Virus record (IMG/VR): IMGVR_UViG_3300036846_000743
Coordinates: 162,074-226,073 of that record
DNA: 64,000 nt
Reading direction: 5' to 3' (one strand)
In this document: positions 44,917-64,000 of the stretch, one piece after another
Numbering within the stretch: position 1 is the stretch's first letter
How the letters are laid out: every line of letters starts with the position of its first letter
Notes under the pieces: model-generated
The model's input: the letters and a program-made list of their open reading frames with translations, nothing else
Database searches by the model: none
Told to the model about the DNA's origin: nothing
Made by a program: the position numbers and the translations under genes

Positions 44917-44936
44917 GAAACTCTCCTATACACAAG

Positions 44937-44966: not shown

Positions 44967-44977
44967 GAATGCCGCGA

Positions 44978-46798: not shown

Positions 46799-46827
46799 AT
46801 CCTAGCAAGCCAGTCTGCCTCCGGCAA
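46799..46827 (-). promoter_or_regulatory. sigma70-type promoter with extended -10
   Basis: TTGCCG-17 nt-TAGGAT with TGn immediately before the -10. Confidence 0.65.
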
Positions 46828-46874
46828 TATCCCGGCTTTACGCGATGTAGATAGGATCCAAAACATCACTCCGA

Positions 46875-47627
46875 TCAATCCGTGTCGATCGATCGAACGC
46901 GTTGTGCTTCTGCCAGCGTATAGGTGTCTTCCGGCGGAGGAATACCTTCCTCGATCGGCGTATCTTCCAGGCCCTGCTGCGGGGAGCTTTCCTGGATGCC
47001 ATCCTTCATGAAAAGGGCCATGATGCCAATGACTACGTCATTGGCACCAGTGTCGCGGCATGTAACCACGTACTCACCGTCATCGAGCTTGCCTGAGAGC
47101 CGCGTGCTGTAAAAAAAGCCCGATGGCTTGCCCGGCGTAGCTGTGGGCATACCCGCACGCGGGGCGACCGGCAAGACCGAAAACTTCTTGCTGGCAAAGT
47201 CGTAGAAAAAGTTGTCTTTAACCCTCCGGATCGAGTAGATCAGGACGGTCTTCCTGTAAAACCAGAACACGATGTCCACGCCGCGCCTCCCGAGTGGGCC
47301 TTCCCAGGGCGGCTGTGAAAAGGCTTTGACGCCCGGATCGGACTGGAAGCCCATGACCTGAAGCGCCGTCTTCACGTCCTGCTTCGTAATGCCACCGCAT
47401 ACCGTTTGATCGTGCGTACCGGGCAAAGGAAAGTCCACGCCAACAGTATGTGACGGGACTTCCCCGAAAACTTCAGTCTTCCATTGGTGCACCGACATGT
47501 GGTCCTTGATCTGGCCCACGTACGGCGCAATCGCGTCCACGAACGAGCGGTCGCCGGTCAGCTCCGCAAGGAGCTGACCGGGCTTGGGCACGATGATGCG
47601 CTTCTCATCACTTTCCGAGGTACTCAT
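46875..47627 (-). CDS. hypothetical protein ending in a variant tag (RVRSIDTD)
   Basis: 250 aa; overlaps the polymerase stop region. Confidence 0.7.
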   Translation of the reverse strand: MSTSESDEKRIIVPKPGQLLAELTGDRSFVDAIAPYVGQIKDHMSVHQWKTEVFGEVPSHTVGVDFPLPGTHDQTVCGGITKQDVKTALQVMGFQSDPGVKAFSQPPWEGPLGRRGVDIVFWFYRKTVLIYSIRRVKDNFFYDFASKKFSVLPVAPRAGMPTATPGKPSGFFYSTRLSGKLDDGEYVVTCRDTGANDVVIGIMALFMKDGIQESSPQQGLEDTPIEEGIPPPEDTYTLAEAQRVRSIDTD

Positions 47628-50600: not shown

Positions 50601-51258
50601 GGATCTCCTGCCAGAGCAGCGGCGCGCAGTTCTTGAGCCACGCCTGCTGCATGGTCCCCGACGTGGGGTCCAGCCTGTTGAACTTCACGGTGTTGGTGAC
50701 ATACCAGTTGCTCCGGGCCTCCAGCGAGACTCCAAGCTCGCGAAGCGCACGGTGCAGTGGTTCGGACGACTGGCCGATAAAATTCTGCTCAAAGGTAAGC
50801 TCCTCAGCACCTGGATGCTTACCGATGATCATGACGTCGGAGTGATAACGCGGGCCGGCAGCTTTCCTGTATTCGACCCATTCGTAGTCCTGGCTGTTTA
50901 CCGAGCTGTTCCTCGAGTTGAAGAACGGCGGCAATGACCAGCGCCCACCCCGCAGGAATGTGGCGTTGACGAACTGGCCCTTGAAGCTGACCTGAAGTTG
51001 CCACTTGCGCTTGTAGAGCGCATTGCGGTAGAGATGTTCCAGGCCGATCATGGCCGGATCGTCGCGCGCCATCTTGGCCGAGACCTTGGATTCGGTCAGC
51101 TGGAGTACGGTCCTGGCAAAGTCAGGACCAGCCGCCGGAATGAGCGGATGGTCCATTGGCACCAGATGCTTCCATGCGTAGCGAGCCCAGCGTTGCTCGC
51201 GGGACAAATTCTTGACGTCGTCGAAAGTGGTGGAATCATCGTCTTTGGTCGTGGTCAT
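47608..51258 (-). CDS. family A DNA polymerase with N-terminal family-4 UDG-like domain and 3'-5' exonuclease
   Basis: UDG-like GKHPG..E...NFIG, TNTVKF, HPAY; exo DAEW, KADI, YALYD; pol TGRCSS..PNLQN, D....E, R..AK...FG..YG, NYPIQ, IHD; start after AGGGAG. Confidence 0.92.
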   Translation of the reverse strand: MTTTKDDDSTTFDDVKNLSREQRWARYAWKHLVPMDHPLIPAAGPDFARTVLQLTESKVSAKMARDDPAMIGLEHLYRNALYKRKWQLQVSFKGQFVNATFLRGGRWSLPPFFNSRNSSVNSQDYEWVEYRKAAGPRYHSDVMIIGKHPGAEELTFEQNFIGQSSEPLHRALRELGVSLEARSNWYVTNTVKFNRLDPTSGTMQQAWLKNCAPLLWQEILLVRPKFIACLGTEAIRAVLGKGFTVGNMTGRVVEMKYNFPPFDAETHAAFDDLGSYGEQTVQIIGMPHPAYIFRMQEAYPDLLSGLRQLTELIKGERPQDIESTRDHSVCYTPKHLARVIDNILEKASREWDSEIDGDLPIAWDAEWHGRHPGDPGSYLRTIQFSVGGNYRRAPMKATCVGLSDQGGGLGRPTTELIARELRRLIDGRHSNGEIHIKTRHGGHFFKADIPWIREFLGIDFAPLWTVPSPQEPGPKGETEEQRRERLPKRINGVAYRKKIAKFQIEEDANAEAEKRAPVLVSRDLVDRNQLVEPHEPWEMTRYTGGFDTGYMTHAVFEATESFDLEQLAMRWTTIPRWSVDVEEAKVRIAKEMGIKLRDLGGYGDIPDNVLVPYALYDADATLRLFWRFNFARTLNDGDGFLDQDVWHKSSREPYWRTMLAGLTFLEMEETGVTVDVDRGKELIKVFELVKERLTTSLREELNWPSFNPNSPAQVRAWLFGEEFSRVIDKKTGKNRPQMPDPEMKLGKVPIKTTGKPSRSWGTLNPRDKQLLVPAVDKEVLGIFAHTDDRVKKLRDIRYIRQVLQSVLRPPKIGEAMGAEANGSVVFDEADEFDGGFLSYVNTRDSRVRSRFYPVETGRCSSSGPNLQNLAKRREDDYARILGHVEDGEVIGDYTKILGAPLYKNPIRSIVTAGEWDDVPTVLMEFDIIAAEIAALAWESGDEKMIEDVNRAMLPEDDPDFLDLHSSTAVEAFKLSCDPNKKALKALGKPGLRVAAKNVRFGVPYGRSAEALSRQCREEGADVSVQECQRLIDNYYKRYPAASSFLAECEARPGSRTPYLVGAFGRMRRFGRVDDKSAQADQGRSAKNYPIQNLVADAILLGMYNLRQLRINGFRNKFRTVLQIHDAVMLEVKIPHIEEVREAVVLALSDDVEIMPRTLDGIRFDDKKKMEAAGRGGRCLEKPYHFKVDCSVFLNWGQAIDPERGRSLGIPDEYLGK

Positions 51259-51310
51259 CGCAGTCTCCCTTGTCAGCCAATGATAGGCATGCGCGGGAAA
51301 GGGATCGAAG

Positions 51311-52438
51311 TCAGGCAAAGCTGGCGATGTCGATCCCCTTCGCATCGCCAGCGGCGTAGATCAGGTTCCAGATCGTTTCATAGTCGAAATTCCCAGGGTC
51401 TTTCCCGTGGGGTAAGTGGACTCGCACGGCTGCCCCACCGGTCTTGGCATAACTGTTCCCCAGGCTGGTGAAAGCCAGAGCCAGCCGCCGCTGTTCTTTG
51501 TAGTCTTGATCGGCGTCAGGATCAAGCATGAGCACCAGGCAACGGGGCTCGCTGCTGTAAGCTGTCAGGCTCGCAAGCCTGAACATCTGGTGCGCCGTGA
51601 TTGACTTGCCCAGCAGCGCCACCGCAGCGTCGCCGACGGTCCAGACGCCGGTCACGCCTTCGACCACAACGATGATCCGGCCCTGGGATGCTCGATCCCA
51701 ATTGTAGAGGATCCTGCGCTTCTTCATGCCCGGCAGGTTGTAATACTTCCGGACCCCACAGGCGCTCCAGTTCAGTTCGCCGATGTAACGGGCCTGCCAG
51801 CCGACCAGCTGGTGTTCCATCTCGATGGGGACCACGAGCCGGCCCTGGACCTGGGAAAACTCGAATGCCTTGCGGCAATAACACAGGCCATACTTGCGGC
51901 CCAGCTTGGCCGCGTCGTAGCCGCGATCCTCGATGTATCGGACCGCCTGGTGATCGAACGACAACTCATCCAGACGAATAACCCGGCCTGGCATCTCGAC
52001 CGCGACGAGCGGCCCTTCATCGCTCCGGTTACCCGGCCGTGTTGCCAGCAGAAGGTTCCGCTCCCCGGCGCTCATCTCGGCACGGAACAACCGGATCTCA
52101 AGATCCTGTCGGTTCTCGACAGCCCGGCGATCACGACCTGACAGGCAACCCTCGTTGTAGCAGTTGACCAGCCAGTTGATCGTGCGACCATCATCGTCCA
52201 GCGAGCCGTAGCAATAATGGAACCAGAGCCGCTGACGGCTATCGCCGCAGTAAGGGCAGTTGACCCTGTAATACTCGCCCGACTGGATGATGTCCCACTC
52301 CATTCGCTTTTCGACGGAGTTCCAGTGTCGGCTGGCAATGACGACCTCCTCGCCTTCGTTGGCGATGGTGATCTCGCCGAACGCGCGGCGAAGCAATTCG
52401 TAAAGGCCAGGACAAAGCGGGCCGGTGAACTGCATCAT
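51311..52438 (-). CDS. DNA primase (Zn finger + TOPRIM)
   Basis: CPYCGD...CYNEGC, VVVEG and LMLDPD. Confidence 0.85.
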   Translation of the reverse strand: MMQFTGPLCPGLYELLRRAFGEITIANEGEEVVIASRHWNSVEKRMEWDIIQSGEYYRVNCPYCGDSRQRLWFHYCYGSLDDDGRTINWLVNCYNEGCLSGRDRRAVENRQDLEIRLFRAEMSAGERNLLLATRPGNRSDEGPLVAVEMPGRVIRLDELSFDHQAVRYIEDRGYDAAKLGRKYGLCYCRKAFEFSQVQGRLVVPIEMEHQLVGWQARYIGELNWSACGVRKYYNLPGMKKRRILYNWDRASQGRIIVVVEGVTGVWTVGDAAVALLGKSITAHQMFRLASLTAYSSEPRCLVLMLDPDADQDYKEQRRLALAFTSLGNSYAKTGGAAVRVHLPHGKDPGNFDYETIWNLIYAAGDAKGIDIASFA

Positions 52439-52441
52439 GAC

Positions 52442-52675
52442 CTACCCTCCCAGCGCCCGAAACGTGAACACGTTGCCGAGCTTGGTCCAGATCTTGATCA
52501 CGCCGTCTTTCCAACTCACCCGCTTACGTGTCAACACGACAGACTCAGCTCCGGTGGGGTGATACCACTCTCTGCCGTGAACAAGATTCAGCTTCCCGGT
52601 TGTACCAACAAGATCGCCGAATTCCTCCTGGTTGCCCGTGACCGAGATCAGCTTCACACTGACGAGTTCCATCAT
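52442..52675 (-). CDS. small hypothetical protein
   Basis: 77 aa between helicase and primase. Confidence 0.6.
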   Translation of the reverse strand: MMELVSVKLISVTGNQEEFGDLVGTTGKLNLVHGREWYHPTGAESVVLTRKRVSWKDGVIKIWTKLGNVFTFRALGG

Positions 52676-54354
52676 TCATCCCCTTCTGTGCCCGCGTATG
52701 GCTTCCACGGGGCGATCGGTGGGGCAGTCATGCCCGCCGGGACCGGCTCACCGTGGATCTCATTGTAGAGATGCGACTGGACAATCCGCTTGGTAACAAT
52801 CTTGTAATTGTTGCTCGCGTCCATCGTGCGACCGTAGCCGCCATCAAGCGATACCAGAGTGTCCATTCCCTGGTTCTCGCTGCGCCGCCCCTTGGTGTAG
52901 AAGACGCGGCAGCACCCGGTCGAACCATCCTTGACGCCAAAGACGAGGCAGTTGACCAGGTTCTCGGCGAAGTCGCGGGCCTCACCCGCATGAGCATGGT
53001 TCAGCGGGGCCGTCGGCGAGCGCGTATTGGCCTCGCCAGAAAGCTGCTGAAGCAACCACACGGTACAGCCGAATCGCTCGGCCAGCTCCATCTTGGCCAC
53101 CATCGGCGTCTCGTTGATCAGATGCCGCAGGGCTCGGTCCGGGTCCTTGTCCTGGGCCTTCAGGTACCGACGGCACATGATCTTGGTGTAGTCGACAATG
53201 ATCGTATCGATCGCCCAGCCGTACTGCTGTTGCTGCCGCTCGATGTACGAGGCCAGCTCGGGAACCCAGCCTACGCCGCGGCCATCCTTGCGCATGTCCA
53301 TCATCTGCAAATTCTGGCCGATCTGCGCATCGGCCTTGAGCAACCGCTCGTACTCGCCGTCCATCAACTCGGGATCAGCAATCTGCTGCATCTCATACCA
53401 CGTCAGCTCGTAGGGGCGCAGGTGGCCCTTGCGGCTGAGCTGATCCAGCGACTTGAGGCCCTCCAGCGTCGCTTTCCTGATGTGCGCAGCGCACGACATG
53501 ATGCGCGGCCGAATATCGCGATCGATGTCTTCCTCGTAAGACGCGAAGATGATCTGCCGGAGCCGTTCGTGGCCGGCATCGCCGTGGACGTGCCAGGCCA
53601 TACACAGCTTGGCTCGCTCCACGGCAGCTTGTACCGCGAACATGGTTTTGCCGCCGCCGAATGGCCCCAGGATCCCGTTCACGTCACCAGGAGCTTGACC
53701 ACCCATCAGGTTGTCTGCCCACTGGATCCCGATCGGTGTCGTATCGATCGTGGTCGGCACCCAGCCCGCAGGAAGCATGGTCTGAAATGGATTGCTGCCG
53801 ATCGCCTGGACGGCCCGGTCCTTGAGAGTGATCTTGTTCAGATAAGCGCCGAAGCCCATTACATTGCGGCCGCTAGCACTGTCGATCACGCGGCGGACCT
53901 TGTCCTGGATCTGCCGCTCCTGGAGGAACTTCCTCAAGAGCGTGAGGCCATACGGCACGCTCAAGTCATTCTCATTGACTCCCATGTACGCATGATAGAG
54001 AAGCCCGTTATACGGGTCGGCATCGTCGGGTCGACCGACAATATCGTTGATCAGGAACTGCGACTGCCGCAGAATCGCATCATCATCCAGAATGCGCTTG
54101 ACCTCGGTGTGGACCGCCACGTAAGGGATCCCACCGATCGTGTATAGCTTGGAGTCCCCCAGCTGGAAGAAGCCGTCGATCAAGATCCGATAATGCCGCT
54201 CAGAATTCGCATCCCAGTCGTCAATCTCGACGTGCTGACGAGCCTCGGCGTAGACTGCGGGCACCCGGATGATATGGATGAGCAACTCCTCCAACTCGGC
54301 CGGAGTCATGCGTGGCTCATCCTGTACCCCGCCACTCCCGAATTTCCCTGCCAT
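52672..54354 (-). CDS. DnaB-like (SF4) replicative helicase
   Basis: GPFGGGKT, SYEE, IIVDY, LQQLS and KGR. Confidence 0.85.
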   Translation of the reverse strand: MAGKFGSGGVQDEPRMTPAELEELLIHIIRVPAVYAEARQHVEIDDWDANSERHYRILIDGFFQLGDSKLYTIGGIPYVAVHTEVKRILDDDAILRQSQFLINDIVGRPDDADPYNGLLYHAYMGVNENDLSVPYGLTLLRKFLQERQIQDKVRRVIDSASGRNVMGFGAYLNKITLKDRAVQAIGSNPFQTMLPAGWVPTTIDTTPIGIQWADNLMGGQAPGDVNGILGPFGGGKTMFAVQAAVERAKLCMAWHVHGDAGHERLRQIIFASYEEDIDRDIRPRIMSCAAHIRKATLEGLKSLDQLSRKGHLRPYELTWYEMQQIADPELMDGEYERLLKADAQIGQNLQMMDMRKDGRGVGWVPELASYIERQQQQYGWAIDTIIVDYTKIMCRRYLKAQDKDPDRALRHLINETPMVAKMELAERFGCTVWLLQQLSGEANTRSPTAPLNHAHAGEARDFAENLVNCLVFGVKDGSTGCCRVFYTKGRRSENQGMDTLVSLDGGYGRTMDASNNYKIVTKRIVQSHLYNEIHGEPVPAGMTAPPIAPWKPYAGTEGDE

Positions 54355-55046
54355 CAGAGCACCTCACTGTAGAAATGGTCGGCCGCCTTGCGCAACTCAT
54401 CTGGAATACGATCGCCCCAGGTAGCGTCGTACGCCTCACGGTCGAAGACATACATCCGGAATGCCTCCTGTTTGAACCGCTCAGCTACATCATCAGCGCC
54501 ACCGATCGTTCCCACGCAGTAGCGGTAGAGCGGTGACAGTTCGTTGGTTGGATCGTTCAAGGCACGGCGCGCCGCAGCCTCGACGTCCATCTTGTCGTAG
54601 AGTTGGTGGACCGTGGTCGCAGCCTTGAACCGATGATCCTCCATCTTGAGGTTCTCGCTATAGACGGTGTACGCGTCTGCGAGCATCCGCGCACGCCGCA
54701 GCGACAGCGCATTGGCAAACTGGTTGGGAAAAGGCGGTGTCGGGCTCTTCCACTCCCGGAATGTACCCCGGACCAGCAGGATCGGGCTGATCGAGTTGGA
54801 GAGCGCGTAGCGGACGATGTCGAACCAGACGGGCTTGTCGTAGACCTTGCCCTGTCCATCGCGACCACCGTCCCAGCGAGGTATAGGCTGAGATCCATAC
54901 GTGCACGGCCCGCCACCTTGCTTGGTCTCGACATGCCGACGGTACTCGAGGATGTAGTAAGTTCGTACCGTGTTGGCCATGTCATAGAGATCATGGCCGT
55001 TGTCGACCCTGTGGTTGCTGCGCGTTGGCATCGCCAAGAGCCTCAA
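54354..55046 (-). CDS. hypothetical protein
   Basis: About 230 aa; translationally coupled to the helicase. Confidence 0.65.
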   Translation of the reverse strand: MRLLAMPTRSNHRVDNGHDLYDMANTVRTYYILEYRRHVETKQGGGPCTYGSQPIPRWDGGRDGQGKVYDKPVWFDIVRYALSNSISPILLVRGTFREWKSPTPPFPNQFANALSLRRARMLADAYTVYSENLKMEDHRFKAATTVHQLYDKMDVEAAARRALNDPTNELSPLYRYCVGTIGGADDVAERFKQEAFRMYVFDREAYDATWGDRIPDELRKAADHFYSEVL

Positions 55047-56587
55047 GTGAAAAACATCCGTGCAACGCCTGAACTGGAGAATGTGCCAGCTGGCTCGATC
55101 TGCACCCAGGCGTGCTTCTTGTAAACACGGCGTCGTGCCATGGCCTGCTTGTAAAACTGCTCGTCAAACTCGTCATTGAAGTCATAGACGACACCGTATT
55201 CCTTTCCGGACTCATCGTGAATACGCGAGACGCGAGACGGTCCCTGAGTCGCATCGATGGGCGAGGAACCCCCGCCAGCCCAGATCAGGGCCGCCAGGGC
55301 GTCGAATGACACACCCAAACGCCAGACGCCGGTAGCAATGGCGCCCCGGATCTTGCCTGCTTCGAAGTCCTCGCGGAGTTGCTTGCGAACAGCAACCGTC
55401 AATGGCGTGTAGTTAACCGGCAGCAACCCGTACTTGCGGTAGTAGCCCTCATCGGCCTCGTCGATGTTGCCGTAGCAGAGCGCGAAGTCAGGCATGAGCC
55501 TGGCCAGGTGCAGCAAATGTTCAATCTTATCGACCAGCACTAAGATCTGGTCGCCTTCTTCGTAGTGCTTTTGAGCGATCTTAGCGATATGCGCATTCCG
55601 GACCTTATTCGTCCAGATGCCATGCCGTTTCCTCGCTGTATCGCCCTGTAGCCCCTTCGTCGGGTTGCCACCCATTTCCACCCGCTGCCAGCGTACCTCG
55701 ATCGGTACGACCAGCTTGAGGCCAACAGCCTCGGGGTAGGTCAGCTTAAACAGAGTCCCGCCGAAGACCGCTTCCATGCGGGCATCTGCGTTATCGGATC
55801 GTCCCTCGACGGTGGCCGTGAAGCCAAAGCGAATGGCCTGGGGGGTCGTCGTGACGATATCGGCAACGTAGGTCTCGGCGAGCAGCTCGTGAACCTCGTC
55901 GCCAAGGAACAGATCCGCAGTCCCAGCGTAATTCCCCACCGACGCAGCCGTAGCCACAGTCACGCGGGCTTGCTTGGCCCGCCCGGCTCCGCGCTGGCCG
56001 ATCGACGGCTGCGGCAGATAGCGGAGCAGCACGCGGATTGTCTTCTGCACGTTGTCAGTCGACTTCACGCAGATCAGGATCTGGGCCGTAGGTAGAAGCA
56101 TTGCCAGGGCGGCGAATAGCTCAGTCTTGCCGAAACCAGCGGCAGCATCGATCACGCCGCCGCGACGAGCCTTGTAGGCCGCCTCGATGGTCCGCAGGGC
56201 TTCTTCCTGGCGGGGCCGGAACTGGAATGACCCCAGGTTGTCCCAGTGCCACTCCAGCTGCTGAGGAAACTGGGGGGAGTCATCAACATAGCAGATCTGA
56301 TAACCCTGGCTGGCGAGTATCTTCTGTACCCGGTCATAATAACCAGCCGGGAAGTTAAGGCAGCCGTAGTCATCGATGCTGAACAGCTTGCGCTGCTCGG
56401 TCTTGATCCGCTGACCGGAAGACTTACCGAACGCTTCACGGCCGTACAGCCGCGTCACGTGCCGGTACTGCATGTAGTAGGTCAGCTCGGAATAGACGTC
56501 GATCGGCAGTGGCTCGTCGAGCCGGCTAGCCAGGTAGAGCGCATTACCGTTTCGGACCAGTAACGCTTTGAGTGGCGAAGTGATCAT
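55043..56587 (-). CDS. superfamily 2 helicase (UvsW/XPB-like)
   Basis: RPRQ, AAAGFGKT, DEVH, GFTAT and Q...RVSR. Confidence 0.9.
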   Translation of the reverse strand: MITSPLKALLVRNGNALYLASRLDEPLPIDVYSELTYYMQYRHVTRLYGREAFGKSSGQRIKTEQRKLFSIDDYGCLNFPAGYYDRVQKILASQGYQICYVDDSPQFPQQLEWHWDNLGSFQFRPRQEEALRTIEAAYKARRGGVIDAAAGFGKTELFAALAMLLPTAQILICVKSTDNVQKTIRVLLRYLPQPSIGQRGAGRAKQARVTVATAASVGNYAGTADLFLGDEVHELLAETYVADIVTTTPQAIRFGFTATVEGRSDNADARMEAVFGGTLFKLTYPEAVGLKLVVPIEVRWQRVEMGGNPTKGLQGDTARKRHGIWTNKVRNAHIAKIAQKHYEEGDQILVLVDKIEHLLHLARLMPDFALCYGNIDEADEGYYRKYGLLPVNYTPLTVAVRKQLREDFEAGKIRGAIATGVWRLGVSFDALAALIWAGGGSSPIDATQGPSRVSRIHDESGKEYGVVYDFNDEFDEQFYKQAMARRRVYKKHAWVQIEPAGTFSSSGVARMFFT

Positions 56588-56692
56588 TGTTCCCCTTCCG
56601 CAGTCACAAACTGCGCAAAGGGGCTTGTCAGGGCTATTTGCGCCCTGTACACTTCCTTTGGCATGTGAGGAGCCCTGGTTTTGGGATCAAGT
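56588..56692 (-). other. 105-nt structured intergenic segment
   Basis: Hairpins at 56592-56623 (contains the helicase RBS GAAGGGG) and 56629-56647. Confidence 0.5.
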
Positions 56693-57235
56693 TCACGCGA
56701 GCCCGTCGGGTGGCCCCCCGGCGGGCTCGCTGCTTTTCAGCACGTCGCTCTGCGGGATGGCCCTCCCCGCTGGATGAACCGACACGACAGTAAACCGGCC
56801 GTATTCGCCCGGTTTATAGGGCGAAATACCCCGGAACTTGCCAGCCACTTCCATCAACGCTACGAACGTATTGACTGTGAGATCGACCGGTAGAACACAA
56901 TCTATGCCGACAACCCGCCCAGGCAGGAACGCCTCGTGCTGGGCATACCTGGGCCGGGCGTTCTCAGGCCGGTTAGGTTCTTGGATATACCGCTGCCAAA
57001 GCCGCGGGCTGCCGTCAATAGCCGGTGACCATTCGATCTTCTTGACGGTGGCAATCGGGATATTCTTGATCCTGGCGGCATGGGTCACTATAGCTCGCCA
57101 CCAGGTCTGATGGAACAGCACTTGGCCGTCAGGGGTCCGTGGGAAGCAAAATACAGTTCCCAACCCTTCACGGGGGCGCTTATCTGCACCCAAGCAAGGC
57201 AAAATAAAACGAAGCAGGACCTTGACCTCTTGCAC
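56693..57235 (-). CDS. stand-alone RAMP (Cas7/Csm3-like) protein
   Basis: VKVLLRFILPCLG; FPRTPDGQVLF...WRAIV..AA; HEAFLPG..V.I; C-terminal Gly loop AGKFRGISPYKPGEYGRFTV; AGGAGG RBS. Confidence 0.6.
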   Translation of the reverse strand: MQEVKVLLRFILPCLGADKRPREGLGTVFCFPRTPDGQVLFHQTWWRAIVTHAARIKNIPIATVKKIEWSPAIDGSPRLWQRYIQEPNRPENARPRYAQHEAFLPGRVVGIDCVLPVDLTVNTFVALMEVAGKFRGISPYKPGEYGRFTVVSVHPAGRAIPQSDVLKSSEPAGGPPDGLA

Positions 57236-57254
57236 GTCGGATCCTCCTGCCGAC

Positions 57255-57283
57255 GCACGGCGTTACGCTGCGTAACGCCGTGC
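57255..57283. repeat. perfect 14-bp inverted repeat with a 1-nt centre
   Basis: gcacggcgttacgc-t-gcgtaacgccgtgc between the IS110/Nop-like and RAMP-like genes. Confidence 0.95.
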
Positions 57284-57286
57284 CGG

Positions 57287-58312
57287 TCATTTCCCGCCCG
57301 CGACAACATCGCGATGCCGCACATAAGCAGCTGCTTCTGCGCGATCCACAAAGAAATGGTCTGGCGCGAACAAGCCTTCCTGGCGAGGACGCTTGCCCGG
57401 CGCTGCGGGCTTACCTTCGACCCGATCGCAGTAAAGCGCATCGAGCCACACCAGCCGCAGATAGTCCACGAACATCTGACTGGCTCGAAGAGCACCCTTT
57501 ACAGGGCCTTCTTCTCGCCGGTAGCGGCGCCAGAGAAAACAGCCTGGATGATCACGATGCTGGATCGGCGGTGGGCCAAGACCAAACCAGGTATCGAACA
57601 CCAGGCGGCACCGCGCCGTCCCGTCAGACTCCTTGTAGAACCCGAGCACGCTGGCCATCGTTCGCGGATCAAGGCCCAGATAAGCATGCAGCTTGGCCGC
57701 GTCGTCGTGATAAGAGATGACGTCGCCATCGCGGCGAGGCGCGCGCAGCGACACGTACCAGCGAGGATCAAGTATGACCCCCAGCAGCCGTGCCAACTTA
57801 TCCAGATGAAGATACTTGATGAATGACAGGGCCGGCCACGCCGGATGTTCCTCGAGCATCCGATGGCGAAAGTCGCCCATGCTGAAGTCTTGATCGTAAC
57901 CGGCGGCCGCTGCAATGGCGTATGCCGGATAGTCGGTATCGCCGAATTCGTGCCAGCCTCCCAGGGCCGGGTTCAGCCCGTCAGCAGCCGAATCACGCAT
58001 CCGAACCAGCATGAGCTTCGGATTGTCACGCTCGGCGCGAGTCCGGCCAACAACTGCCGGACTCGCAACTTCCAACCGTAGCAGATCACCGCTCCTCTTG
58101 CGGCCGTGCATCGCACACAGAGCCCGGGCGTTGCCGACGCTACCGACCATCCGGATATGACGGGCGCGCTGACAAGCACCGTCCCCGAGAAAGCTCTCAA
58201 CAGGTGCGTGCGTATTGGTGGCGACGCGACCGCCATCCACATACCACACAAGGCCATCCTGCGCCGTGTGCATCTTGAGAACCTGATCCTCGAGGACTTC
58301 CGGTAAAGACAT
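57287..58312 (-). CDS. IS110/Nop-domain-like (Tas-like) protein, apparently catalytically degenerate
   Basis: HPAWPALSFI.....LARLLGVILDPRWY...AKLHAYLGLDP...GALRASQMFVDYLRLVW; no DEDD tetrad recognisable in the N-terminal domain. Confidence 0.55.
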   Translation of the reverse strand: MSLPEVLEDQVLKMHTAQDGLVWYVDGGRVATNTHAPVESFLGDGACQRARHIRMVGSVGNARALCAMHGRKRSGDLLRLEVASPAVVGRTRAERDNPKLMLVRMRDSAADGLNPALGGWHEFGDTDYPAYAIAAAAGYDQDFSMGDFRHRMLEEHPAWPALSFIKYLHLDKLARLLGVILDPRWYVSLRAPRRDGDVISYHDDAAKLHAYLGLDPRTMASVLGFYKESDGTARCRLVFDTWFGLGPPPIQHRDHPGCFLWRRYRREEGPVKGALRASQMFVDYLRLVWLDALYCDRVEGKPAAPGKRPRQEGLFAPDHFFVDRAEAAAYVRHRDVVAGGK

Positions 58313-58345
58313 GTGGTTACCCCCATGATTGGACCGATAAAGACT

Positions 58346-60478
58346 TCATCCGGCCAGTCGCAGGACACCGTCGAAGAGAACCTCGAAGGATGGCTCGTGC
58401 GTGACGAGCAGGCATTGAATGCCACGACTCTCGGAGAGATCGCGCATCTTGCCGATCGCCACTTCCAGGCATGCAAGGTTCCTCTCGTCAAGCGACTCGG
58501 TCGGTTCATCCAGACACAGCAGCCCAGCCGTGCCTGCGAACAAGGAGTTTACAGCGACACGGAAAGCCAAGGCAAGCAGGACCTTCTGACCTTCACTAAG
58601 ACGCTGCGCGGGCGAAACCGTACCAGCATAGGCCCCACGCAGGAATGTAGTCGTGAAGTTCAGGCCATCACCCAGGCTCACCCGAAAGTCGGCATCGAAC
58701 GACTCCAGCAGCTCGTTGGTGTCGTCCGCCAAGATCTCCAAGTAATTATGCGCCACGATCTTGGGCAGGCGATCGTGGTGCATGACCTTGCGGACCTCGC
58801 TCAGGTGGTAGACCCAGAGACGGTCCATCTCGGCCTTGCGCTCGGCCGCTTCCAGCCGCCCTAGCATATCCTCGTCGGACTTCAGGGCGTCCTTGATGGC
58901 ATGCAGCTCACCTTCGGCCCTGACGACCAGCTGACCGAGCGGCTCGACCTCGCGCAGCGCTTCCCGAGCCTTCTTGACCGCAGCCTCGTCGGGAGCCGTG
59001 CCTAGCGCATCACTGCTCTTGACGTGCTTCAGACTGATCTCGTCCAGCTTGCCGCTGCTCCGGCTCACTTCCTTGCGCAGATGCGTAACCCGGATCTCGG
59101 TCTCGGCGATGGCCCTGTCCATGGTTATCCCGGCATCGATCATCTCGCGACAGGTGTCGGGATCAGCAACAGGAACTTCCCCGTTGCTGGCTGTGAAAGC
59201 CGCCTGGTCAAGAGATAGTGTGATCATGCGCTTGGCATGATCCTGGGACCAGCCTTGCCACCGCGCGTGCTCGCGACTGTAACCGGCGTGTTCCTCCTGG
59301 ACCTGAGTCGCATCCTTGAGCGCCTTCTTCAAGCCAGGCAGTTCAGTCTTGTAGAGCTTAACTTTCTTCAGGATCACATCGGTCTCCGTGCCGCAGGTCG
59401 GACAGACCTTCGGTTCGTCCTTGAACCATTTCAGTAGCTCTTCGCGCGTCCTGATCGAATGCCCCAGCTCATCGATCTTCTCCTTCACCACCTTTTCGCC
59501 CGGATAGCCCTTGGGCTCTTGCGGCTCTGGATGTGCTGTCCGTTCCGTTTTCAGGCCATCTTCTCGGGCCTTGAGCGCTTCTTCCTGCTCCCGCCGTTTC
59601 TTGGCGACTTCCCATTTGGCCAGGGCCTCCTGGGCGGCATTGATGTCCCCGGCGGCGCCCGCTTTGGCCTGTTCGAGTTCAGCCTGCTCCTGCACAGCAG
59701 CCGTCAGCTCTTTCTGCCTGGCCTCCAGGTCGGCTGCCAGCTCATCGACCTGCTCGCCCAGGGAAACGACGACCACGCGATCACGCCGCCACTGTTCGTC
59801 GCGACTGACCAGCGCCTGGGCCGCCGGGACGTCGAGCTTGTTGATCACGGCGTTGTCCTTGGCGATCGCCGCCACCAGCTCATCCCGGCGACCCTGGTTG
59901 CGCGCGACCCGCGCACGCAACGTGTCGATCTCCGGATTGGGCTGTGCCGGGTTGACCCGCTTGATCTCGGCATCCAGGAGTTTGTAGATAACATCGGCGC
60001 GCGCCAGGTCGAACAGCTGGCCGAAGGTCTTGTTGCGCTCGGCTGGCGTCTCGTCGATGAATGCAGCCATGTTCCGCTGCGGGACGAAAATGTACTCGGA
60101 CAGGATACGCTGATCCACTCCGAGTAGATCCAGGACCGCCGCGGTCACGGCGTTGTCGCCGTCGATCGCGTCGCCACTGCCGATCCGGCAAGTACTGACC
60201 CCTCGACGTAGTACGCGGATAATCTCGACCTTGATCCCGTTATGCTCGAAGTTGAGCACGATCCGGGACCGCTCCCGGTTATCTGCCAGCTGGCAGATAT
60301 TCTCGGTCTTAGTCCCCGCGTTGTCGATTGTGCCCAGGATGGCGCCTCGTATCGCCTTAACAACATTGCTCTTGCCAGAGCCATTCGGCCCCACGATGCC
60401 GTTGAGCCCGTGATGCCAGACATGCTTCAAATGCCGATGCTGGCAGAAATTCTCCAGGACAAGCCGTTCCAGCTTCAT
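58346..60478 (-). CDS. SbcC/Rad50-like ATPase
   Basis: GPNGSGKS, coiled coil with CPTC hook, LSEGQ, LDEP and VTH. Confidence 0.92.
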   Translation of the reverse strand: MKLERLVLENFCQHRHLKHVWHHGLNGIVGPNGSGKSNVVKAIRGAILGTIDNAGTKTENICQLADNRERSRIVLNFEHNGIKVEIIRVLRRGVSTCRIGSGDAIDGDNAVTAAVLDLLGVDQRILSEYIFVPQRNMAAFIDETPAERNKTFGQLFDLARADVIYKLLDAEIKRVNPAQPNPEIDTLRARVARNQGRRDELVAAIAKDNAVINKLDVPAAQALVSRDEQWRRDRVVVVSLGEQVDELAADLEARQKELTAAVQEQAELEQAKAGAAGDINAAQEALAKWEVAKKRREQEEALKAREDGLKTERTAHPEPQEPKGYPGEKVVKEKIDELGHSIRTREELLKWFKDEPKVCPTCGTETDVILKKVKLYKTELPGLKKALKDATQVQEEHAGYSREHARWQGWSQDHAKRMITLSLDQAAFTASNGEVPVADPDTCREMIDAGITMDRAIAETEIRVTHLRKEVSRSSGKLDEISLKHVKSSDALGTAPDEAAVKKAREALREVEPLGQLVVRAEGELHAIKDALKSDEDMLGRLEAAERKAEMDRLWVYHLSEVRKVMHHDRLPKIVAHNYLEILADDTNELLESFDADFRVSLGDGLNFTTTFLRGAYAGTVSPAQRLSEGQKVLLALAFRVAVNSLFAGTAGLLCLDEPTESLDERNLACLEVAIGKMRDLSESRGIQCLLVTHEPSFEVLFDGVLRLAG

Positions 60479-61587
60479 ACGCTCTCCTCACTTGATGCTT
60501 CGTAGAACTCATTTCTCATGGCCTCCAGCTCGATCCGCGGATCGGCGACTTCCAGCAGCCGTACCGATGAATCCCGCACTGGGCCGGGCTCGCAAACCAT
60601 GTGAACAGCACCGGCCAGGCCACGATCCGCAACCTGTCGACGAGCTGTAGCCGACGGTGCCCGTTCGTCGCGACGCCGGCTCCGGTGCCGCAGGAACAGA
60701 TGACAGCGATCTTCGAGTGCATTAGCCAGCTTGGCACCAAGGCCCTCGATGTCATCGTAGTAGGCAATATCGATCACGGCCCGCTTGATCCCCTCGCCGT
60801 CCAGGGGCAAGTCACGGCGCGCCAGAAAGGCTTCAGCTTCCTGATGTGTCGTGATCTGGTAGCGGCGAATCGGCCGCGTATCGAGATTGATCGACTCGAC
60901 ACGGAACGGGTTCGCATCGTTATAGATGGCATAGAACCGTTTTGTCTCTTCTTCGGCCACATCGCGGACGTGGGTTGAACCTGGCGAAAGCGCCACGCCC
61001 ATTGACCCATTCAGGGCCTTATAGCTCAGCTCTGTGTGCACGTGATAGTCACCAGCCAGTAAGTGCATCGCGAACGGTAACTGCGCCATCGACAGCTCGG
61101 CCTGGCGCACGTTGCCCATGAATTCGTGCCATACCTGGTGACAGAGCAGGAATGATCCTGACGGGGCCTGGAGGGTAGCATACGTCGCCATGAACTCGGC
61201 AGGCCGCATGTAGTCGAGCCCGTAGATCATGAAGTCGTCCACGTCGTACACCAGACCGTGCAAGTGAACCGGATCTGGATGGATCGAAGGCCAGTCCTGC
61301 CGGCCATCGTGCTGCCCGAGGACATAGACGACCTGTACTTCGTCACCGCTGAGCTTCTCGAACTGATCACGCAGGAACTTGATCGTCTCGGGCCGCGGCG
61401 TCGGCTTGTCCAGGATGTCTCCGCCCAGCGCCAGAATATTCGCTTTGTGTTCGCAGCAGAACCCAACGATCTGCTCGAACGAGTGCTGAGCATCCCCAGT
61501 GATGCCTCGGTACTTCCAGGCGCCGGTTTCGTCGAAATGCAGGTCCGCCGCGAACACGATGGACGGACGGTCGAGCTTGGTCATCAC
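60475..61587 (-). CDS. SbcD/Mre11-like nuclease
   Basis: ADLH, GGDILD, GQHD, CHQ, GDYH and PGS. Confidence 0.9.
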   Translation of the reverse strand: MMTKLDRPSIVFAADLHFDETGAWKYRGITGDAQHSFEQIVGFCCEHKANILALGGDILDKPTPRPETIKFLRDQFEKLSGDEVQVVYVLGQHDGRQDWPSIHPDPVHLHGLVYDVDDFMIYGLDYMRPAEFMATYATLQAPSGSFLLCHQVWHEFMGNVRQAELSMAQLPFAMHLLAGDYHVHTELSYKALNGSMGVALSPGSTHVRDVAEEETKRFYAIYNDANPFRVESINLDTRPIRRYQITTHQEAEAFLARRDLPLDGEGIKRAVIDIAYYDDIEGLGAKLANALEDRCHLFLRHRSRRRDERAPSATARRQVADRGLAGAVHMVCEPGPVRDSSVRLLEVADPRIELEAMRNEFYEASSEESV

Positions 61588-61877
61588 AACCCTTTCTTAG
61601 TCTTTTCGAGATACTCATGGAGAAGTTTCATCTGATAGTCAGTCAGGCGATGCCGCCGCTTCATCTTCTCCAGATAATAGCGCTCATTCGCCTTGTAGAC
61701 AGCTTCGCAGTACTCGAAGAACGACTGCCCGGACTTTTCGAGAGCCCTGGCCAGCCGGAGCGCGTCGACGGCGCTGGGGATCTTGTAGATCCTCCTCAGC
61801 TCAAAGACATGCTCCATGAGTTCACCTTCACGCTCAGAAGTTTCGTCCCACAACTTGTCGAAAACGATGGAAACCAT
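61584..61877 (-). CDS. hypothetical protein
   Basis: AAGGAG RBS before MVSIVFDK. Confidence 0.65.
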   Translation of the reverse strand: MVSIVFDKLWDETSEREGELMEHVFELRRIYKIPSAVDALRLARALEKSGQSFFEYCEAVYKANERYYLEKMKRRHRLTDYQMKLLHEYLEKTKKGL

Positions 61878-61886
61878 GATGGCTCC

Positions 61887-62011
61887 TTGACAGTTTGGCC
61901 GCTCCCTGGTGACCATGAGGATACAGCCTGGTTGGGCCCTCCAAAGTGCGCCGACTGGATGGCGCTCCCCAACAAGGATGGACCATGGATGTTTCGCACG
62001 GAGGAAGTCTC
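61887..62011 (+). promoter_or_regulatory. putative csrA promoter and GGA-rich leader (CsrA-binding sites)
   Basis: TTGACA at 61887 with a weak -10 (GACCAT); seven GGA at 61919, 61957, 61976, 61980, 61987, 62000 and 62003. Confidence 0.65.
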
Positions 62012-62260
62012 ATGCTAGTCCTATCGCGAAAAATTGGCGAGCGGATCCACATCAATGATGATGTCGTCATCACGGTGATCCGGATCCAAGGGGACAAGGT
62101 GCGCCTCGGTATCGAAGCCCCTCGCATCATCCCGGTGCACCGGGCAGAAGTCCTGGAACGGATCAGGATCGCGGCGGCCCTGGCGCCACAGCCCGATACA
62201 TCGGCTCCTGGCATGCCTGCATCTGAAGAGCGGCCTACCAGAGTGGCTCGCCGTCCCTAG
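62012..62260 (+). CDS. csrA: carbon storage regulator CsrA/RsmA
   Basis: MLVLSRKIGERIHINDDVVITVIRIQGDKVRLGIEAPRIIPVHRAEV; GGAGG RBS. Confidence 0.95.
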   Translation: MLVLSRKIGERIHINDDVVITVIRIQGDKVRLGIEAPRIIPVHRAEVLERIRIAAALAPQPDTSAPGMPASEERPTRVARRP

Positions 62261-63065
62261 TCTGCTTGCGGAACCACGCATAATACTGCCGCAGGGACTG
62301 TTCGTCGTGCACCGCAACATATCGAATGGGATGGTAGATGAGGAAGTCGCGGCGCAGAATCTTCGGGCTCGGCGCCAGTCGCATGTGATTGTGCTGGTTG
62401 GCGTAGATGGGCGGCTTGGGATCATCCATGCTGCCCCAGGTGACGACGTACGCGCCGAGAATCTGGGCGACCCACGAAATGTATGGGTCAGGCCAGAGTG
62501 GCCATCCCGCGCAGCCATCCGGCACCAACAGGCTACGTTCGACCATCGCATCGACCAGCCCGCGAGACATCCAGTTGATCGCGTAGAAGATCGTTTCTGA
62601 ACTCAGGTCTACGGGCCCGAAGATGTTCCTGGCTTCGGGCAGCCAGCGACCTAGCAGCTGGGGCACCTGCTTCCAGTAGTTCTGATAGTGGACCCTATCA
62701 CGGACCCCGAGCAGATCGATAGCTGTGAGATCCATCTTGGCGATTGCCCACTCGTCGATGCCGCAACCGATCGGGAGTGCGTCATCGTCGAGGCAGAGCA
62801 CATACCTGAAGTCGATGCCGTCGTTGAGGGCAAACTGGATGCCCTCGTAGTTCTTGAACCCTGATAGATGCTTCTGCCCGGGAAGCCGCGATGCGATCCG
62901 AAAGTAATTATCCTCACGGCGAATCACCGGATCGTCGCGCTCGAGTGTGTCGTCCACACAGACGATGGCGCACGGCAGTGTATGCGACCAGCGAATCGCT
63001 TCCACATGATCCTGGATGATACCCTTCCTGTTGGTCGTGAAAACGACCAGGGTTTCTACCTTCAT
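62235..63065 (-). CDS. putative GT-A glycosyltransferase
   Basis: VCVDD and VLCLDDDALP; ATGA-coupled to the GT75-like gene. Confidence 0.6.
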   Translation of the reverse strand: MKVETLVVFTTNRKGIIQDHVEAIRWSHTLPCAIVCVDDTLERDDPVIRREDNYFRIASRLPGQKHLSGFKNYEGIQFALNDGIDFRYVLCLDDDALPIGCGIDEWAIAKMDLTAIDLLGVRDRVHYQNYWKQVPQLLGRWLPEARNIFGPVDLSSETIFYAINWMSRGLVDAMVERSLLVPDGCAGWPLWPDPYISWVAQILGAYVVTWGSMDDPKPPIYANQHNHMRLAPSPKILRRDFLIYHPIRYVAVHDEQSLRQYYAWFRKQTRDGEPLW

Positions 63066-64000
63066 GACTCCCATCCTGCCTCCTTGAATTTGTCACACCA
63101 CTCCAGGATCCAGCCGCCGAGCTGTGGTATGTATTGTCGCAGCTGTTGATCACGAACCTGCACAACATGAGCCCCTTCGAGATACGTGCCGATGTGACTC
63201 ATGCATCGCAGTGGCGTATCGTCGCTTGGCCCCAGCGGCACGTCGTCGATGATCCTCCAGAATTCCTCATTGGCCCTGATACCGGGTGACTCCCCGACCA
63301 GGTTATCCATGGGCCGCGATGCCTTCATGTGATTGACGATCGGCTTACCCACCGAACAGGCCAGATCCAGGTGGCGCATGCACTTCTGGGCGATCACGCC
63401 GCCCCAGATATCATCAAACCTGCGGAATGGCATGCCTTCACCATTGCGCGGGAAATAAAGCAAGGGGGTGATCTCGCGGCGAAATGCGATGTTCATGCCG
63501 CAGAGTGGCCAGTACTGTCGCGGGCTCATCACCCGCGAGTGCCGGTAGATATTCTTCATGGGCTTCCAGGGCTTGTAATATCCCTCGGGCGTCCAGTTGG
63601 TCAGCTCGTGAACCGCATCACGGTCCGGGATCGTAGCCCAGACGCCCATGTTCAGTGAGGTTGTCATCTCGCCGAGAGAATTCTGACGGAGCCGCGGCCG
63701 CCGCCGACCATCATCATCAGTGCCGTAAGGCATCCCTCGTGGTATGAAGCCAGGGATCGAAGTCGTCCACCGATCGGTGTGATAGAGCGCTGCCACATGC
63801 TGTTCCACGAAGCTGGCACGCGCAGCCTCGATCAGCTGGTCATGATCAGCGCCCTTGCGGTGCCAGCTGGGATCAGCCGCCAGTGCACATGGCAGACAGT
63901 CGTCGTCGAGCGTGATGACGACATCGGCCCCATGCTCGAGCACCGCGGCCAGAAAGCCCCAGGTCTTGATGCCCGAGTCGCAGCGGGCCAACCAGCCTGG
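63062..64000 (-). CDS. reversibly glycosylated polypeptide / UDP-arabinopyranose mutase-like (GT75); 5' end outside window
   Basis: DSGIKTWGF, TLDDDC, PRGMPY, GVW..IPD.DA, CGMNIAFRRE, RFDDIWGG and H.KAS....NL..E..G; frame stays open to 64000. Confidence 0.85.
   Translation of the reverse strand, partial: PGWLARCDSGIKTWGFLAAVLEHGADVVITLDDDCLPCALAADPSWHRKGADHDQLIEAARASFVEQHVAALYHTDRWTTSIPGFIPRGMPYGTDDDGRRRPRLRQNSLGEMTTSLNMGVWATIPDRDAVHELTNWTPEGYYKPWKPMKNIYRHSRVMSPRQYWPLCGMNIAFRREITPLLYFPRNGEGMPFRRFDDIWGGVIAQKCMRHLDLACSVGKPIVNHMKASRPMDNLVGESPGIRANEEFWRIIDDVPLGPSDDTPLRCMSHIGTYLEGAHVVQVRDQQLRQYIPQLGGWILEWCDKFKEAGWES

What the first reader, a model, noticed from the sequence alone, without database searches (positions are those of the whole stretch)
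61887..62260. Lone plus-strand csrA with a leader packed with CsrA sites
Seen: csrA is the only clear plus-strand gene in 64 kb. About 90 nt upstream hold seven GGA, including ACAAGGAUG, CAUGGAUGU, CACGGAGGA (the SD) and one in a hairpin loop (gcgcc-gactGGAt-ggcgc, 61948-61965), downstream of a perfect TTGACA. Established: CsrA binds ANGGA motifs, preferably in loops, and autoregulates. Inference: the phage makes CsrA only when host CsrA activity is low, or the leader acts as a CsrB-like sponge.
Basis: partly seen in the sequence, partly recalled or inferred. Interest (0 to 1): 0.65.

Follow-up and report, generated by a model that had tools for sequence, protein, structure and literature searches.

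The report
Phage csrA with conserved CsrA-site leader
A giant soil phage, probably of planctomycete bacteria, carries its own copy of the RNA-binding regulator CsrA behind a conserved, folded leader RNA studded with CsrA recognition motifs, so the gene is most likely switched off by CsrA itself, a known kind of feedback not yet shown in a phage.

Summary
csrA is at 62012-62260 (+) (Pfam E 3e-22). Seven GGA lie in the 87 nt before it, more than before any of the other ~225 genes of this 226-kb virus record. Every other dense GGA cluster in the genome is coding.

Eight related leaders from other metagenomes, four of them fetched through the neighbouring gene, keep the same anatomy:
- a 10-bp helix P1;
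- an apical hairpin P2 with GGA in its loop in 9 of 9 sequences;
- two single-stranded CA-N-GGA sites, the last being the Shine-Dalgarno sequence.

The structure shows covariation (92.5% of cells paired; 0 of 500 shuffles reach this).

- The GGA at 61919 is not conserved.
- The ACAAGGA site lies inside P1.
- TTGACA is conserved but has only a weak -10 partner, and it overlaps the neighbour's ribosome site.

Best reading (about 0.55): CsrA-family proteins, phage or host, bind the P2 loop and the Shine-Dalgarno site and repress translation, as at E. coli csrA and glgC. A stand-alone sponge RNA is not supported. No RNA data exist, so the transcription start and binding are untested.

Verdict: a new member of a known kind, of moderate interest.

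The parts
61584..61877 (-). Divergent 97-aa gene of unknown function. It most likely starts at ATG 61877. It is syntenic with csrA in all relatives.
   Evidence: ORF list. An AAGGAG ribosome site lies 6 nt before ATG 61877. Homologues are 46-89% identical and sit next to csrA in L002, L004, L175, L178 and L181. There is no Pfam or PHROG hit.
61883..61893 (.). Block CTCCTTGACAG, invariant in 9 of 9 sequences. On the - strand it holds the ribosome site of the 97-aa gene. On the + strand it holds TTGACA (61887-92), the candidate -35 of csrA.
   Evidence: Alignments A4 and A7. TTGACA is not enriched in intergenic DNA of this genome.
61911..61916 (+). GACCAT, a weak candidate -10 (A2, A5 and T6 of TATAAT), 18 nt after TTGACA. 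Relatives keep GAC(C/G)AT or GACATT at 17-18 nt.
   Evidence: Sequence and alignment. It does not pass the consensus scan. Inference only.
61919..61921 (+). GGA that is not conserved. It probably lies at or before the transcription start.
   Evidence: Present in 3 of the first 5 relatives aligned.
61927..61977 (+). Helix P1: 61927-61936 pairs with 61968-61977. It encloses P2 and contains the GG of the ACAAGGA site.
   Evidence: Predicted in the individual folds of all nine sequences. Pair 61929/61975 occurs as A-U 3, U-A 2, G-C 1, G-U 1, broken 2.
61948..61965 (+). Hairpin P2: stem 61948-52 with 61961-65, and loop 61953-60 holding GGA 61957-59.
   Evidence: GGA sits in a 4-8 nt loop in 9 of 9 sequences with different stems and loops. 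Three of 5 pairs show changes on both sides. The unpaired probability of the loop GGA is 0.94-1.0.
61973..61982 (+). CAAGGA (site 2a, mostly paired in P1) and the overlapping GGA 61980-82 (site 2b, kept in 6 of the 9 leaders: L086, L175 and L180 have GGT or GAT there).
61983..61992 (+). Site 3, CCATGGATGT. CA and GGA are invariant in the eight leaders that reach this site, and the N between them varies. It matches 8 of 9 positions of the SELEX core CARGGAUGU.
   Evidence: The SELEX consensus is quoted from PMC7652899.
61997..62005 (+). Site 4, CACGGAGGA, which is the Shine-Dalgarno sequence, 6 nt before the ATG. CA-N-GGA is invariant. A weak hairpin P3 (61992-95 with 62004-07) would place it in an 8-nt loop.
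62012..62260 (+). csrA, 82 aa. The CsrA domain is residues 1-52, followed by a proline-rich basic tail.
62235..63074 (-). Convergent 279-aa gene. Its 3' end overlaps the 3' end of csrA by 26 nt.
   Evidence: The same overlap is seen in L002 and L004 (68 nt) and in L086.

Best explanation
The roughly 90-nt csrA leader is a cis-regulatory RNA that is bound by CsrA-family dimers, either the phage's own protein or the host's paralogues, which share the same RNA-contact residues.

Shown:
- The leader folds into a conserved stem P1 topped by hairpin P2, whose loop displays GGA.
- Downstream lie a conserved CCA-N-GGAUG site and a CA-N-GGA site that is the Shine-Dalgarno sequence.

Inferred:
- A dimer docks on the P2 loop and/or site 3 and bridges to the Shine-Dalgarno site. 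This blocks the 30S subunit and represses csrA translation, which is negative feedback on total CsrA activity. The same mechanism is described for E. coli csrA (four sites, one on the Shine-Dalgarno sequence) and for glgC (a hairpin-loop site plus a Shine-Dalgarno site).
- Transcription probably starts near 61922-25, from TTGACA-18 nt-GACCAT, so the RNA begins at the foot of P1.
- The gene is a lone opposite-strand insert at the head of the replication and recombination module.
For: - Real CsrA with intact RNA-binding residues.
- Highest GGA and ANGGA count of all gene leaders in the genome, and the only non-coding GGA cluster.
- Nine distinct leaders keep the design, four of them retrieved through the neighbouring protein and therefore blind to GGA content. 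The flanking proteins are only 46-61% identical.
- CA and GGA are invariant while the N between them varies, at three sites in the five leaders of A4 (46% of leader columns are invariant overall). In the fuller alignment A7 this still holds for sites 3 and 4; L180 has CAC for the ACA of site 2a.
- The P2 loop holds GGA in 9 of 9 sequences despite different stems and loops.
- P1 and P2 are 92.5% paired. No shuffle of 500 reaches that value or the covariation score. Slid controls give 32-52%.
- G-U pairs in L004 and L178 fit an RNA read from the + strand.
- A 2-nt indel between the Shine-Dalgarno sequence and the ATG excludes an N-terminal coding extension.
- The published precedent has the same architecture (PMC7652899).
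Against: - There is no binding, transcription-start or expression evidence. No RNA run holds the sequence.
- No consensus -10 is present.
- Site 2a is largely base-paired in P1, and its variable N is explained by pairing rather than by the ANGGA rule.
- The P2 loops of four relatives are GGAG tetraloops without the A at -2, smaller than the preferred hexaloop.
- Any Shine-Dalgarno sequence of the GGAGG type contains GGA.
- Pairwise nucleotide identity of the leader (0.69-0.75) is no higher than that of the flanking coding DNA.
- Nine related sequences are few, and the tested structure was derived from them.
- Most other phage and planctomycete csrA genes lack such leaders, with means of 2.9 and 2.6 GGA per 100 nt.
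Confidence: 0.55

Rival explanations
1. The conserved P1-P2 element and flanking blocks serve a purpose unrelated to CsrA. Candidates are a 5' stem-loop that stabilises the mRNA, a site for another protein or RNase, DNA operators of the divergent promoter pair, or a terminator for antisense (- strand) transcripts. On this view the GGA motifs are by-products of P1 pairing and of the ribosome site.
For: - Site 2a is inside P1, and its N covaries with 61929.
- The CTCCTTGACAG block overlaps the neighbour's ribosome site.
- In L086 the hairpin, read on the - strand, passes the terminator scan, and an A-run precedes P2 in most relatives.
- Convergent genes leave no other room for a terminator.
Against: - GGA stays in the P2 loop in 9 of 9 sequences although loop length and sequence change.
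- Site 3 is single-stranded and matches CARGGAUGU, with only its N varying.
- The - strand T-run is absent or only 3 nt long in the window and in L085.
- The G-U pair of L004 becomes a C-A mismatch on the - strand, and L004 fails the terminator scan.
- The element sits directly before a csrA gene.
Confidence: 0.2
2. The leader works mainly as a decoy. It is transcribed strongly early in infection and titrates host CsrA in the manner of an RsmY/RsmZ-type sponge, either as part of the mRNA or as a processed fragment.
For: Five or six GGA in about 90 nt is a density like that of the small Rsm sponge RNAs (my recollection, not tested here). The phage has no FliW with which to antagonise CsrA.
Against: - No terminator or conserved processing signal lies between leader and ORF, and the last site is the gene's own Shine-Dalgarno sequence.
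- No Rfam sponge family matches.
- Only the P2 loop GGA is reliably unpaired.
- The model finds one copy per genome.
- A phage that adds CsrA while removing CsrA would work against itself.
Confidence: 0.1
3. CsrA binding activates rather than represses. It would open a structure that hides the start codon, or protect the 5' end from RNases, as at ymdA, moaA or flhDC, giving positive feedback.
For: RNAalifold and single folds pair GGACCAUGG (61980-88) with the start-codon region in several relatives. The AUG is only 0.34-0.56 unpaired. Activation mechanisms are documented (PMC7652899).
Against: That helix has no covariation. The N of site 3 changes without compensation. The downstream structures differ between relatives. 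A CsrA site on the Shine-Dalgarno sequence is the hallmark of repression.
Confidence: 0.08
4. The GGA density is chance plus shared ancestry and has no function.
For: A triple CA-N-GGA within 30 nt is expected about 0.9 times in the genome by chance and occurs twice. The relatives are few.
Against: - The position is exactly at csrA.
- It ranks first of about 226 leaders.
- The cores are invariant beside variable neighbours, across relatives whose neighbouring proteins are about 50% identical.
- The structure shows covariation.
Confidence: 0.03

Closest known systems
E. coli csrA leader (autoregulation; Yakhnin et al. 2011, as reviewed in PMC7652899)
   Same: A csrA gene is preceded by several GGA sites, one overlapping the Shine-Dalgarno sequence. 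The expected outcome is translational self-repression.
   Different: There is no sequence similarity. This one is a phage gene with a conserved P1-P2 stem-loop, a single candidate promoter instead of five, and no experimental data.
glgC and hcnA-type CsrA/RsmE-repressed leaders
   Same: A high-affinity GGA in a hairpin loop lies upstream of a GGA at the Shine-Dalgarno sequence. The spacing (43 nt from P2 loop to Shine-Dalgarno site, 13 nt from site 3) falls within the range I recall for bridging by one dimer. The weak P3 hairpin resembles the hcnA Shine-Dalgarno hairpin as I recall it.
   Different: The target is the regulator's own gene on a virus. Several P2 loops are GGAG tetraloops rather than ANGGAN hexaloops.
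Phage- and plasmid-borne csrA/rsm alleles (Pseudomonas F116-like rsmM, Vibrio phages; PMC7366521; phage csrA knock-down in PMC11879866)
   Same: A CsrA homologue is carried by a phage. tblastn finds 88 phage records with one.
   Different: This one is closest to planctomycete CsrA and sits in a 226-kb phage. Of 80 other viral csrA loci only one has as many GGA upstream, and none matches the leader model.
CsrB/CsrC/RsmX-Y-Z sponge RNAs
   Same: Several GGA motifs lie in about 90 nt, one of them in a hairpin loop.
   Different: It is not an independent transcription unit, has no terminator and no Rfam match, and most of its GGA are not in loops.

Membership tests
CsrA/RsmA protein family (PF02599) | Domain match above the curated threshold | tested here: met
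   78.6 bits against a cut-off of 27, covering residues 1-52 of 53 profile positions. PHROG CsrA-like regulator at 7e-20.
CsrA/RsmA protein family (PF02599) | RNA-contact residues of strands beta1 and beta5 (L2, L4, R6, V42, R44, I/V47) | tested here: met
   Gapless alignment to RsmE 2jpp and other CsrA chains with these residues kept. They are invariant in the phage and Tautonia alignment. The importance of these residues is recalled from the literature.
CsrA/RsmA protein family (PF02599) | Domain-swapped homodimer fold | not tested
   No structure prediction was run. Sequence identity to solved dimers makes it likely.
CsrA-repressed mRNA leader (csrA / glgC / hcnA type) | Two or more GGA sites, one overlapping the Shine-Dalgarno sequence | tested here: met
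   CA-N-GGA at 61997-62002 is the Shine-Dalgarno sequence. Site 3 is at 61984-89. Both are invariant in the eight relatives that reach them.
CsrA-repressed mRNA leader (csrA / glgC / hcnA type) | GGA exposed in a hairpin loop | tested here: met
   The P2 loop holds GGA in 9 of 9 sequences, with covariation in the stem and unpaired probability 0.94-1.0.
CsrA-repressed mRNA leader (csrA / glgC / hcnA type) | The sites lie within the transcript (transcription start upstream) | not testable with these tools
   No RNA run holds the DNA. The promoter assignment is inference.
CsrA-repressed mRNA leader (csrA / glgC / hcnA type) | Direct CsrA binding and CsrA-dependent repression of translation | not testable with these tools
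   This needs EMSA, footprinting, toeprinting and reporter fusions.
CsrB/Rsm-type sponge sRNA | Independent non-coding transcript with its own terminator | tested here: not met
   The Shine-Dalgarno sequence and the ATG follow directly. No + strand terminator was found in 61400-62600.
CsrB/Rsm-type sponge sRNA | Match to a curated sponge family (CsrB, CsrC, RsmX/Y/Z and others) | tested here: not met
   No Rfam family reaches its gathering score anywhere in the window.
Sigma-70 type promoter | -35 and -10 hexamers at 16-18 nt, with at least 9 of 12 matches | tested here: not met
   The -35 is perfect and conserved, but the -10 GACCAT matches only 3 of 6, and the scan finds none. L002 has one unrelated weak hit.

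The most novel reading that the evidence does not exclude
The leader is a sensor, and partly a decoy, for the host's CsrA network. The likely hosts are planctomycetes, which mostly control CsrA through the protein FliW and can carry up to 17 csrA paralogues. The phage brings a CsrA with a divergent tail and no FliW. Its synthesis would be gated by how much free host CsrA is available to bind the P2 loop and the Shine-Dalgarno site. In this way the phage would read the host's physiological or motility state and then override it with a CsrA that the host cannot antagonise.
Probability: 0.12. Interest if true: 0.65.

Novelty: new member of a known kind. Interest (0 to 1): 0.4.

Why it matters
Phage-borne csrA genes are widespread. 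They occur in 1.2% of phage genomes (PMC7366521), and here tblastn finds them in 88 phage records and 80 IMG/VR contigs. Their role was first probed only in 2025 (PMC11879866), and nothing is known about how they are controlled.

This clade offers a compact, conserved element of about 90 nt with clear predictions: three GGA sites and two helices with natural compensatory variants. It could show whether a viral CsrA is wired into the host's CsrA pool. It also adds an RNA motif that Rfam does not contain, from a phylum (Planctomycetota) where post-transcriptional control is almost unstudied.

If the prediction fails, the P1-P2 element still stands as a conserved structured RNA of unknown role.

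Tried and rejected
- RNA evidence. The look-up of sequencing runs returned only the source soil DNA run. Read laying was therefore not used, and the transcription start is untested.
- Nucleotide similarity to known phages: none.
- More relatives through the neighbour protein in JGI metagenome and IMG/VR scans: none.
- Leader pattern in metagenome contigs: none.
- The relaxed core pattern in IMG/VR gave five chance hits in coding DNA (GWSKDV-type peptides), which I rejected.
- Other GGA-rich places in the genome as candidate sponges:
  - 48834-48954 is the antisense of an Ala/Pro-rich coding repeat.
  - 29784-29921 is an acidic coding repeat.
  - 132510 is a KD-repeat coding region.
  - All three rejected.
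- Global leader stability: the minimum free energy is no better than shuffles (z 0.65 and 0.96), so the case rests on covariation, not on energy.
- MAFFT alignment A4 mis-registers P2, and my first structure string had the wrong length. I used a narrower alignment, A8, instead.
- N-terminal extension from GTG 61946: rejected because of frame-breaking indels in relatives.
- TTGACA as a promoter family of this phage: not enriched between genes.
- Leader model R1:
  - no further copy in the genome;
  - none in 160 other csrA loci;
  - none in 151 sampled Planctomycetota genomes, which means not found in those searched.
- FliW in the phage: none.
- No protein-complex prediction, 3D fold or large representative search was run, because no claim here rests on them.

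Full report
**Where the window lies.** The window is the last 64 kb (162074-226073) of a 226,073-bp IMG/VR virus record that CheckV rates complete. A crude codon-usage gene caller puts about 215 of 225 genes on the - strand. Near the finding, the - strand carries a replication and recombination module:
- DNA polymerase, primase, a DnaB-like helicase, a second helicase and a UvsX-like recombinase;
- SbcC and SbcD;
- an RGP-like glycosyltransferase.

**The observation.** csrA runs from ATG 62012 to the stop at 62260 and encodes 82 aa.
- It matches Pfam CsrA at E 3.4e-22 and PHROG 'CsrA-like regulator' at 7e-20.
- It aligns without gaps to RsmE (2jpp) and CsrA structures over residues 1-52. L2, L4, R6, V42, H43 and R44 are kept.
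- GGAGGA at 62000-05 lies 6 nt before the ATG.
- GGA starts at 61919, 61957, 61976, 61980, 61987, 62000 and 62003.

csrA is probably the only + strand gene in the window. The single other + candidate, 38924-39454, overlaps a longer - strand ORF that also stays open in a relative at 65% identity.

**More than chance?**
- The + strand of the window averages 1.42 GGA per 95 nt, and 0.03% of positions reach seven.
- Among the 100-nt upstream regions of about 226 genes, this one ranks first for GGA (7 against a maximum of 6) and for ANGGA (4 against a maximum of 3).
- Twenty-two clusters of seven or more GGA exist genome-wide, but all the others lie in coding DNA. The two my caller had left as intergenic are low-complexity coding repeats.
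- A triple CA-N-GGA within 30 nt occurs twice in the genome. The other case is a KD-repeat coding region.
- Density alone is suggestive, not decisive.

**Relatives.** The protein word search found a 61%-identical CsrA on a 222,672-bp contig (L002) and others on short contigs (L004, L086). A DNA pattern found a 161-kb IMG/VR record (L085, handle G001). A search with the divergent 97-aa neighbour found four more (L175, L178, L180, L181). That route is blind to the GGA content of the leader.

All of them share the same gene order: SbcC, SbcD and the 97-98-aa gene on one strand, a spacer of 134-137 nt, csrA on the other strand, and a 271-279-aa gene whose 3' end overlaps the 3' end of csrA. The CsrA proteins are about 60% identical and the neighbour proteins 46-53% (89% for L181).

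**Anatomy of the leader.** Nine distinct leaders keep the following features:
- The block CTCCTTGACAG. On the - strand it holds the AAGGAG ribosome site of the neighbour, whose start is therefore ATG 61877.
- A GAC(C/G)AT or GACATT box 17-18 nt further on.
- A 10-bp helix P1 (61927-36 with 61968-77).
- An apical hairpin P2 (61948-65).
- CCA-N-GGAUG (61983-92).
- CA-N-GGA-R-G, which is the Shine-Dalgarno sequence (61997-62005).

Supporting results:
- Each sequence folded alone gives P1 plus P2.
- The P2 loops differ (GACUGGAU, GACAGGAU, GGAG, CCGUGGA, CGGGA, CUGGA), yet each holds GGA.
- On alignment A8, 92.5% of cells pair. No shuffle of 500 reaches that value or the covariation score (0.254 against 0.149). 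Partners slid by 1-3 columns give 32-52%.
- Three of five P2 pairs change on both sides.
- In P1 the pair 61929/61975 occurs as A-U, U-A, G-C and G-U.
- G-U pairs in L004 and L178 suit an RNA read from the + strand.
- At three sites CA and GGA are invariant and the N between them varies, in the five leaders of A4. Only 46% of leader columns are invariant overall. In A7 sites 3 and 4 hold in all eight leaders that reach them.
- A 2-nt indel before the ATG rules out a coding extension.

- The GGA at 61919 is kept in only 3 of the first 5 relatives aligned. It probably lies at or before the start of the RNA.
- The ACAAGGA site is mostly paired in P1, and its variable N is explained by pairing.
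- Only the P2 loop GGA is reliably unpaired (0.94-1.0). The downstream sites are partly accessible and their predicted local folds differ between relatives.
- The whole leader is no more stable than shuffled sequence.
- Its pairwise identity (0.69-0.75) equals that of the flanking genes.
- No -10 passes the consensus scan, and TTGACA is not a recurrent intergenic word in this genome. The promoter is therefore an inference.

**How specific is it?**
- Eighty other viral csrA loci average 2.9 GGA in the 100 nt upstream, against a background of 2.2. One of them, L041, reaches seven, with its own unrelated GGA-loop hairpin.
- Seventy-nine of the closest bacterial csrA loci, nearly all Planctomycetota, average 2.6 with a maximum of 6.
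- A covariance model of the leader (R1) finds one copy in this genome and one in G001, and recovers the held-out L180.
- It finds nothing in the 160 other csrA loci or in 151 sampled planctomycete genomes.
- Rfam has no match in the window.

**Host context.**
- The nearest CsrA proteins are planctomycete (Tautonia and many metagenome-assembled genomes).
- In 101 sampled Planctomycetota genomes, CsrA is present in 42 and FliW in 36. The two genes are often adjacent, and some genomes hold 6-17 csrA copies.
- The phage has no FliW.
- The Tautonia plasticadhaerens csrA has a clear TTGAAT-16 nt-TATAAT promoter and a short leader with several GGA.

**Mechanism.** Published work (PMC7652899) shows three relevant points:
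- CsrA prefers GGA in hairpin loops, with SELEX consensus RUACARGGAUGU.
- At glgC, a dimer bound to a hairpin-loop site bridges to a site on the Shine-Dalgarno sequence and blocks the ribosome.

The phage leader has this architecture. I therefore rate translational repression by CsrA-family proteins, acting as feedback on the summed phage and host CsrA activity, at about 0.55. The fold and the conservation are shown. Binding, the transcription start and the direction of the effect are inferred.

The rivals are:
- a CsrA-independent role for P1-P2 or for the DNA (0.2);
- a decoy role (0.1);
- activation by CsrA (0.08);
- chance (0.03).

The - strand terminator idea gets support only from L086. 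It fails in L004, L002 and the window.

**Novelty.** Phage csrA alleles are documented (PMC7366521; 88 phage records). A knock-down of one gave small plaques (PMC11879866). csrA autoregulation is textbook for E. coli. In five full-text searches of the held paper library I found no report of a cis-regulatory leader for a phage csrA. This is a new member of a known kind: a new RNA motif with the familiar logic, in an unstudied phage-host pair.

**Limits.** There are nine related sequences and no RNA data. The host is unknown. The structure tested was derived from the same sequences.

Noticed in passing
window 62235-62260 (also L002 4188-4255, L004 3367-3434, L086 384-409): The 3' ends of csrA (+) and the 271-279-aa gene (-) overlap by 26-68 nt in every relative. 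This leaves no room for a terminator. Read-through of the long - strand operon would produce antisense RNA to csrA, a possible second layer of control or of timing.
   Followed up: partly
window 43381-61587 (- strand): A replication and recombination module: UvsX-like recombinase, DNA polymerase (1245 aa), primase, DnaB-like helicase, a second helicase, SbcC and SbcD. csrA sits at its upstream edge on the other strand.
   Followed up: partly
window 61584-61877 (-): The 97-aa protein divergent from csrA has no Pfam or PHROG match and only six homologues among 5.8 billion proteins. All of those whose surroundings could be read sit next to this csrA. It shares the 134-nt control region and might be a functional partner. 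This was not tested.
   Followed up: partly
L041 about 770-903 (IMG/VR 85-kb contig): An unrelated viral csrA also has seven GGA in the 100 nt upstream, including a GCCGGC-AGGGAGA-GCCGGC hairpin with GGA in the loop. GGA-rich leaders may have arisen more than once in phage csrA genes.
   Followed up: no
L087 1900-2003 (Tautonia plasticadhaerens chromosome): This host-type csrA has a clean TTGAAT-16 nt-TATAAT promoter and a leader of about 60 nt with GGAUGGA and GAGGACGCAGGAGG. Planctomycete csrA genes may also be self-regulated, and sigma-70-like promoters do occur in this phylum.
   Followed up: no
Planctomycetota genomes G002-G097: Some planctomycete genomes carry 6-17 csrA paralogues, while most have a single csrA next to fliW. 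This is a striking expansion of an RNA-binding regulator.
   Followed up: no
window 38924-39727: Two long overlapping ORFs on opposite strands (176 aa on + and 263 aa on -) both stay open in relative G001 at 62-65% identity. The + frame has the more gene-like GC profile by codon position, and the - frame is longer. Which one is coding is unresolved.
   Followed up: partly
G001 (IMG/VR 161,481-bp record holding L085 and L184): The closest IMG/VR relative is classed as a provirus and is 78% complete. This hints that the phage group may be temperate and that host flanks might identify the host.
   Followed up: no
whole record G000: The strand bias is extreme, with about 215 of 225 genes on the - strand, and the cumulative GC skew falls steadily across the window.
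   Followed up: no
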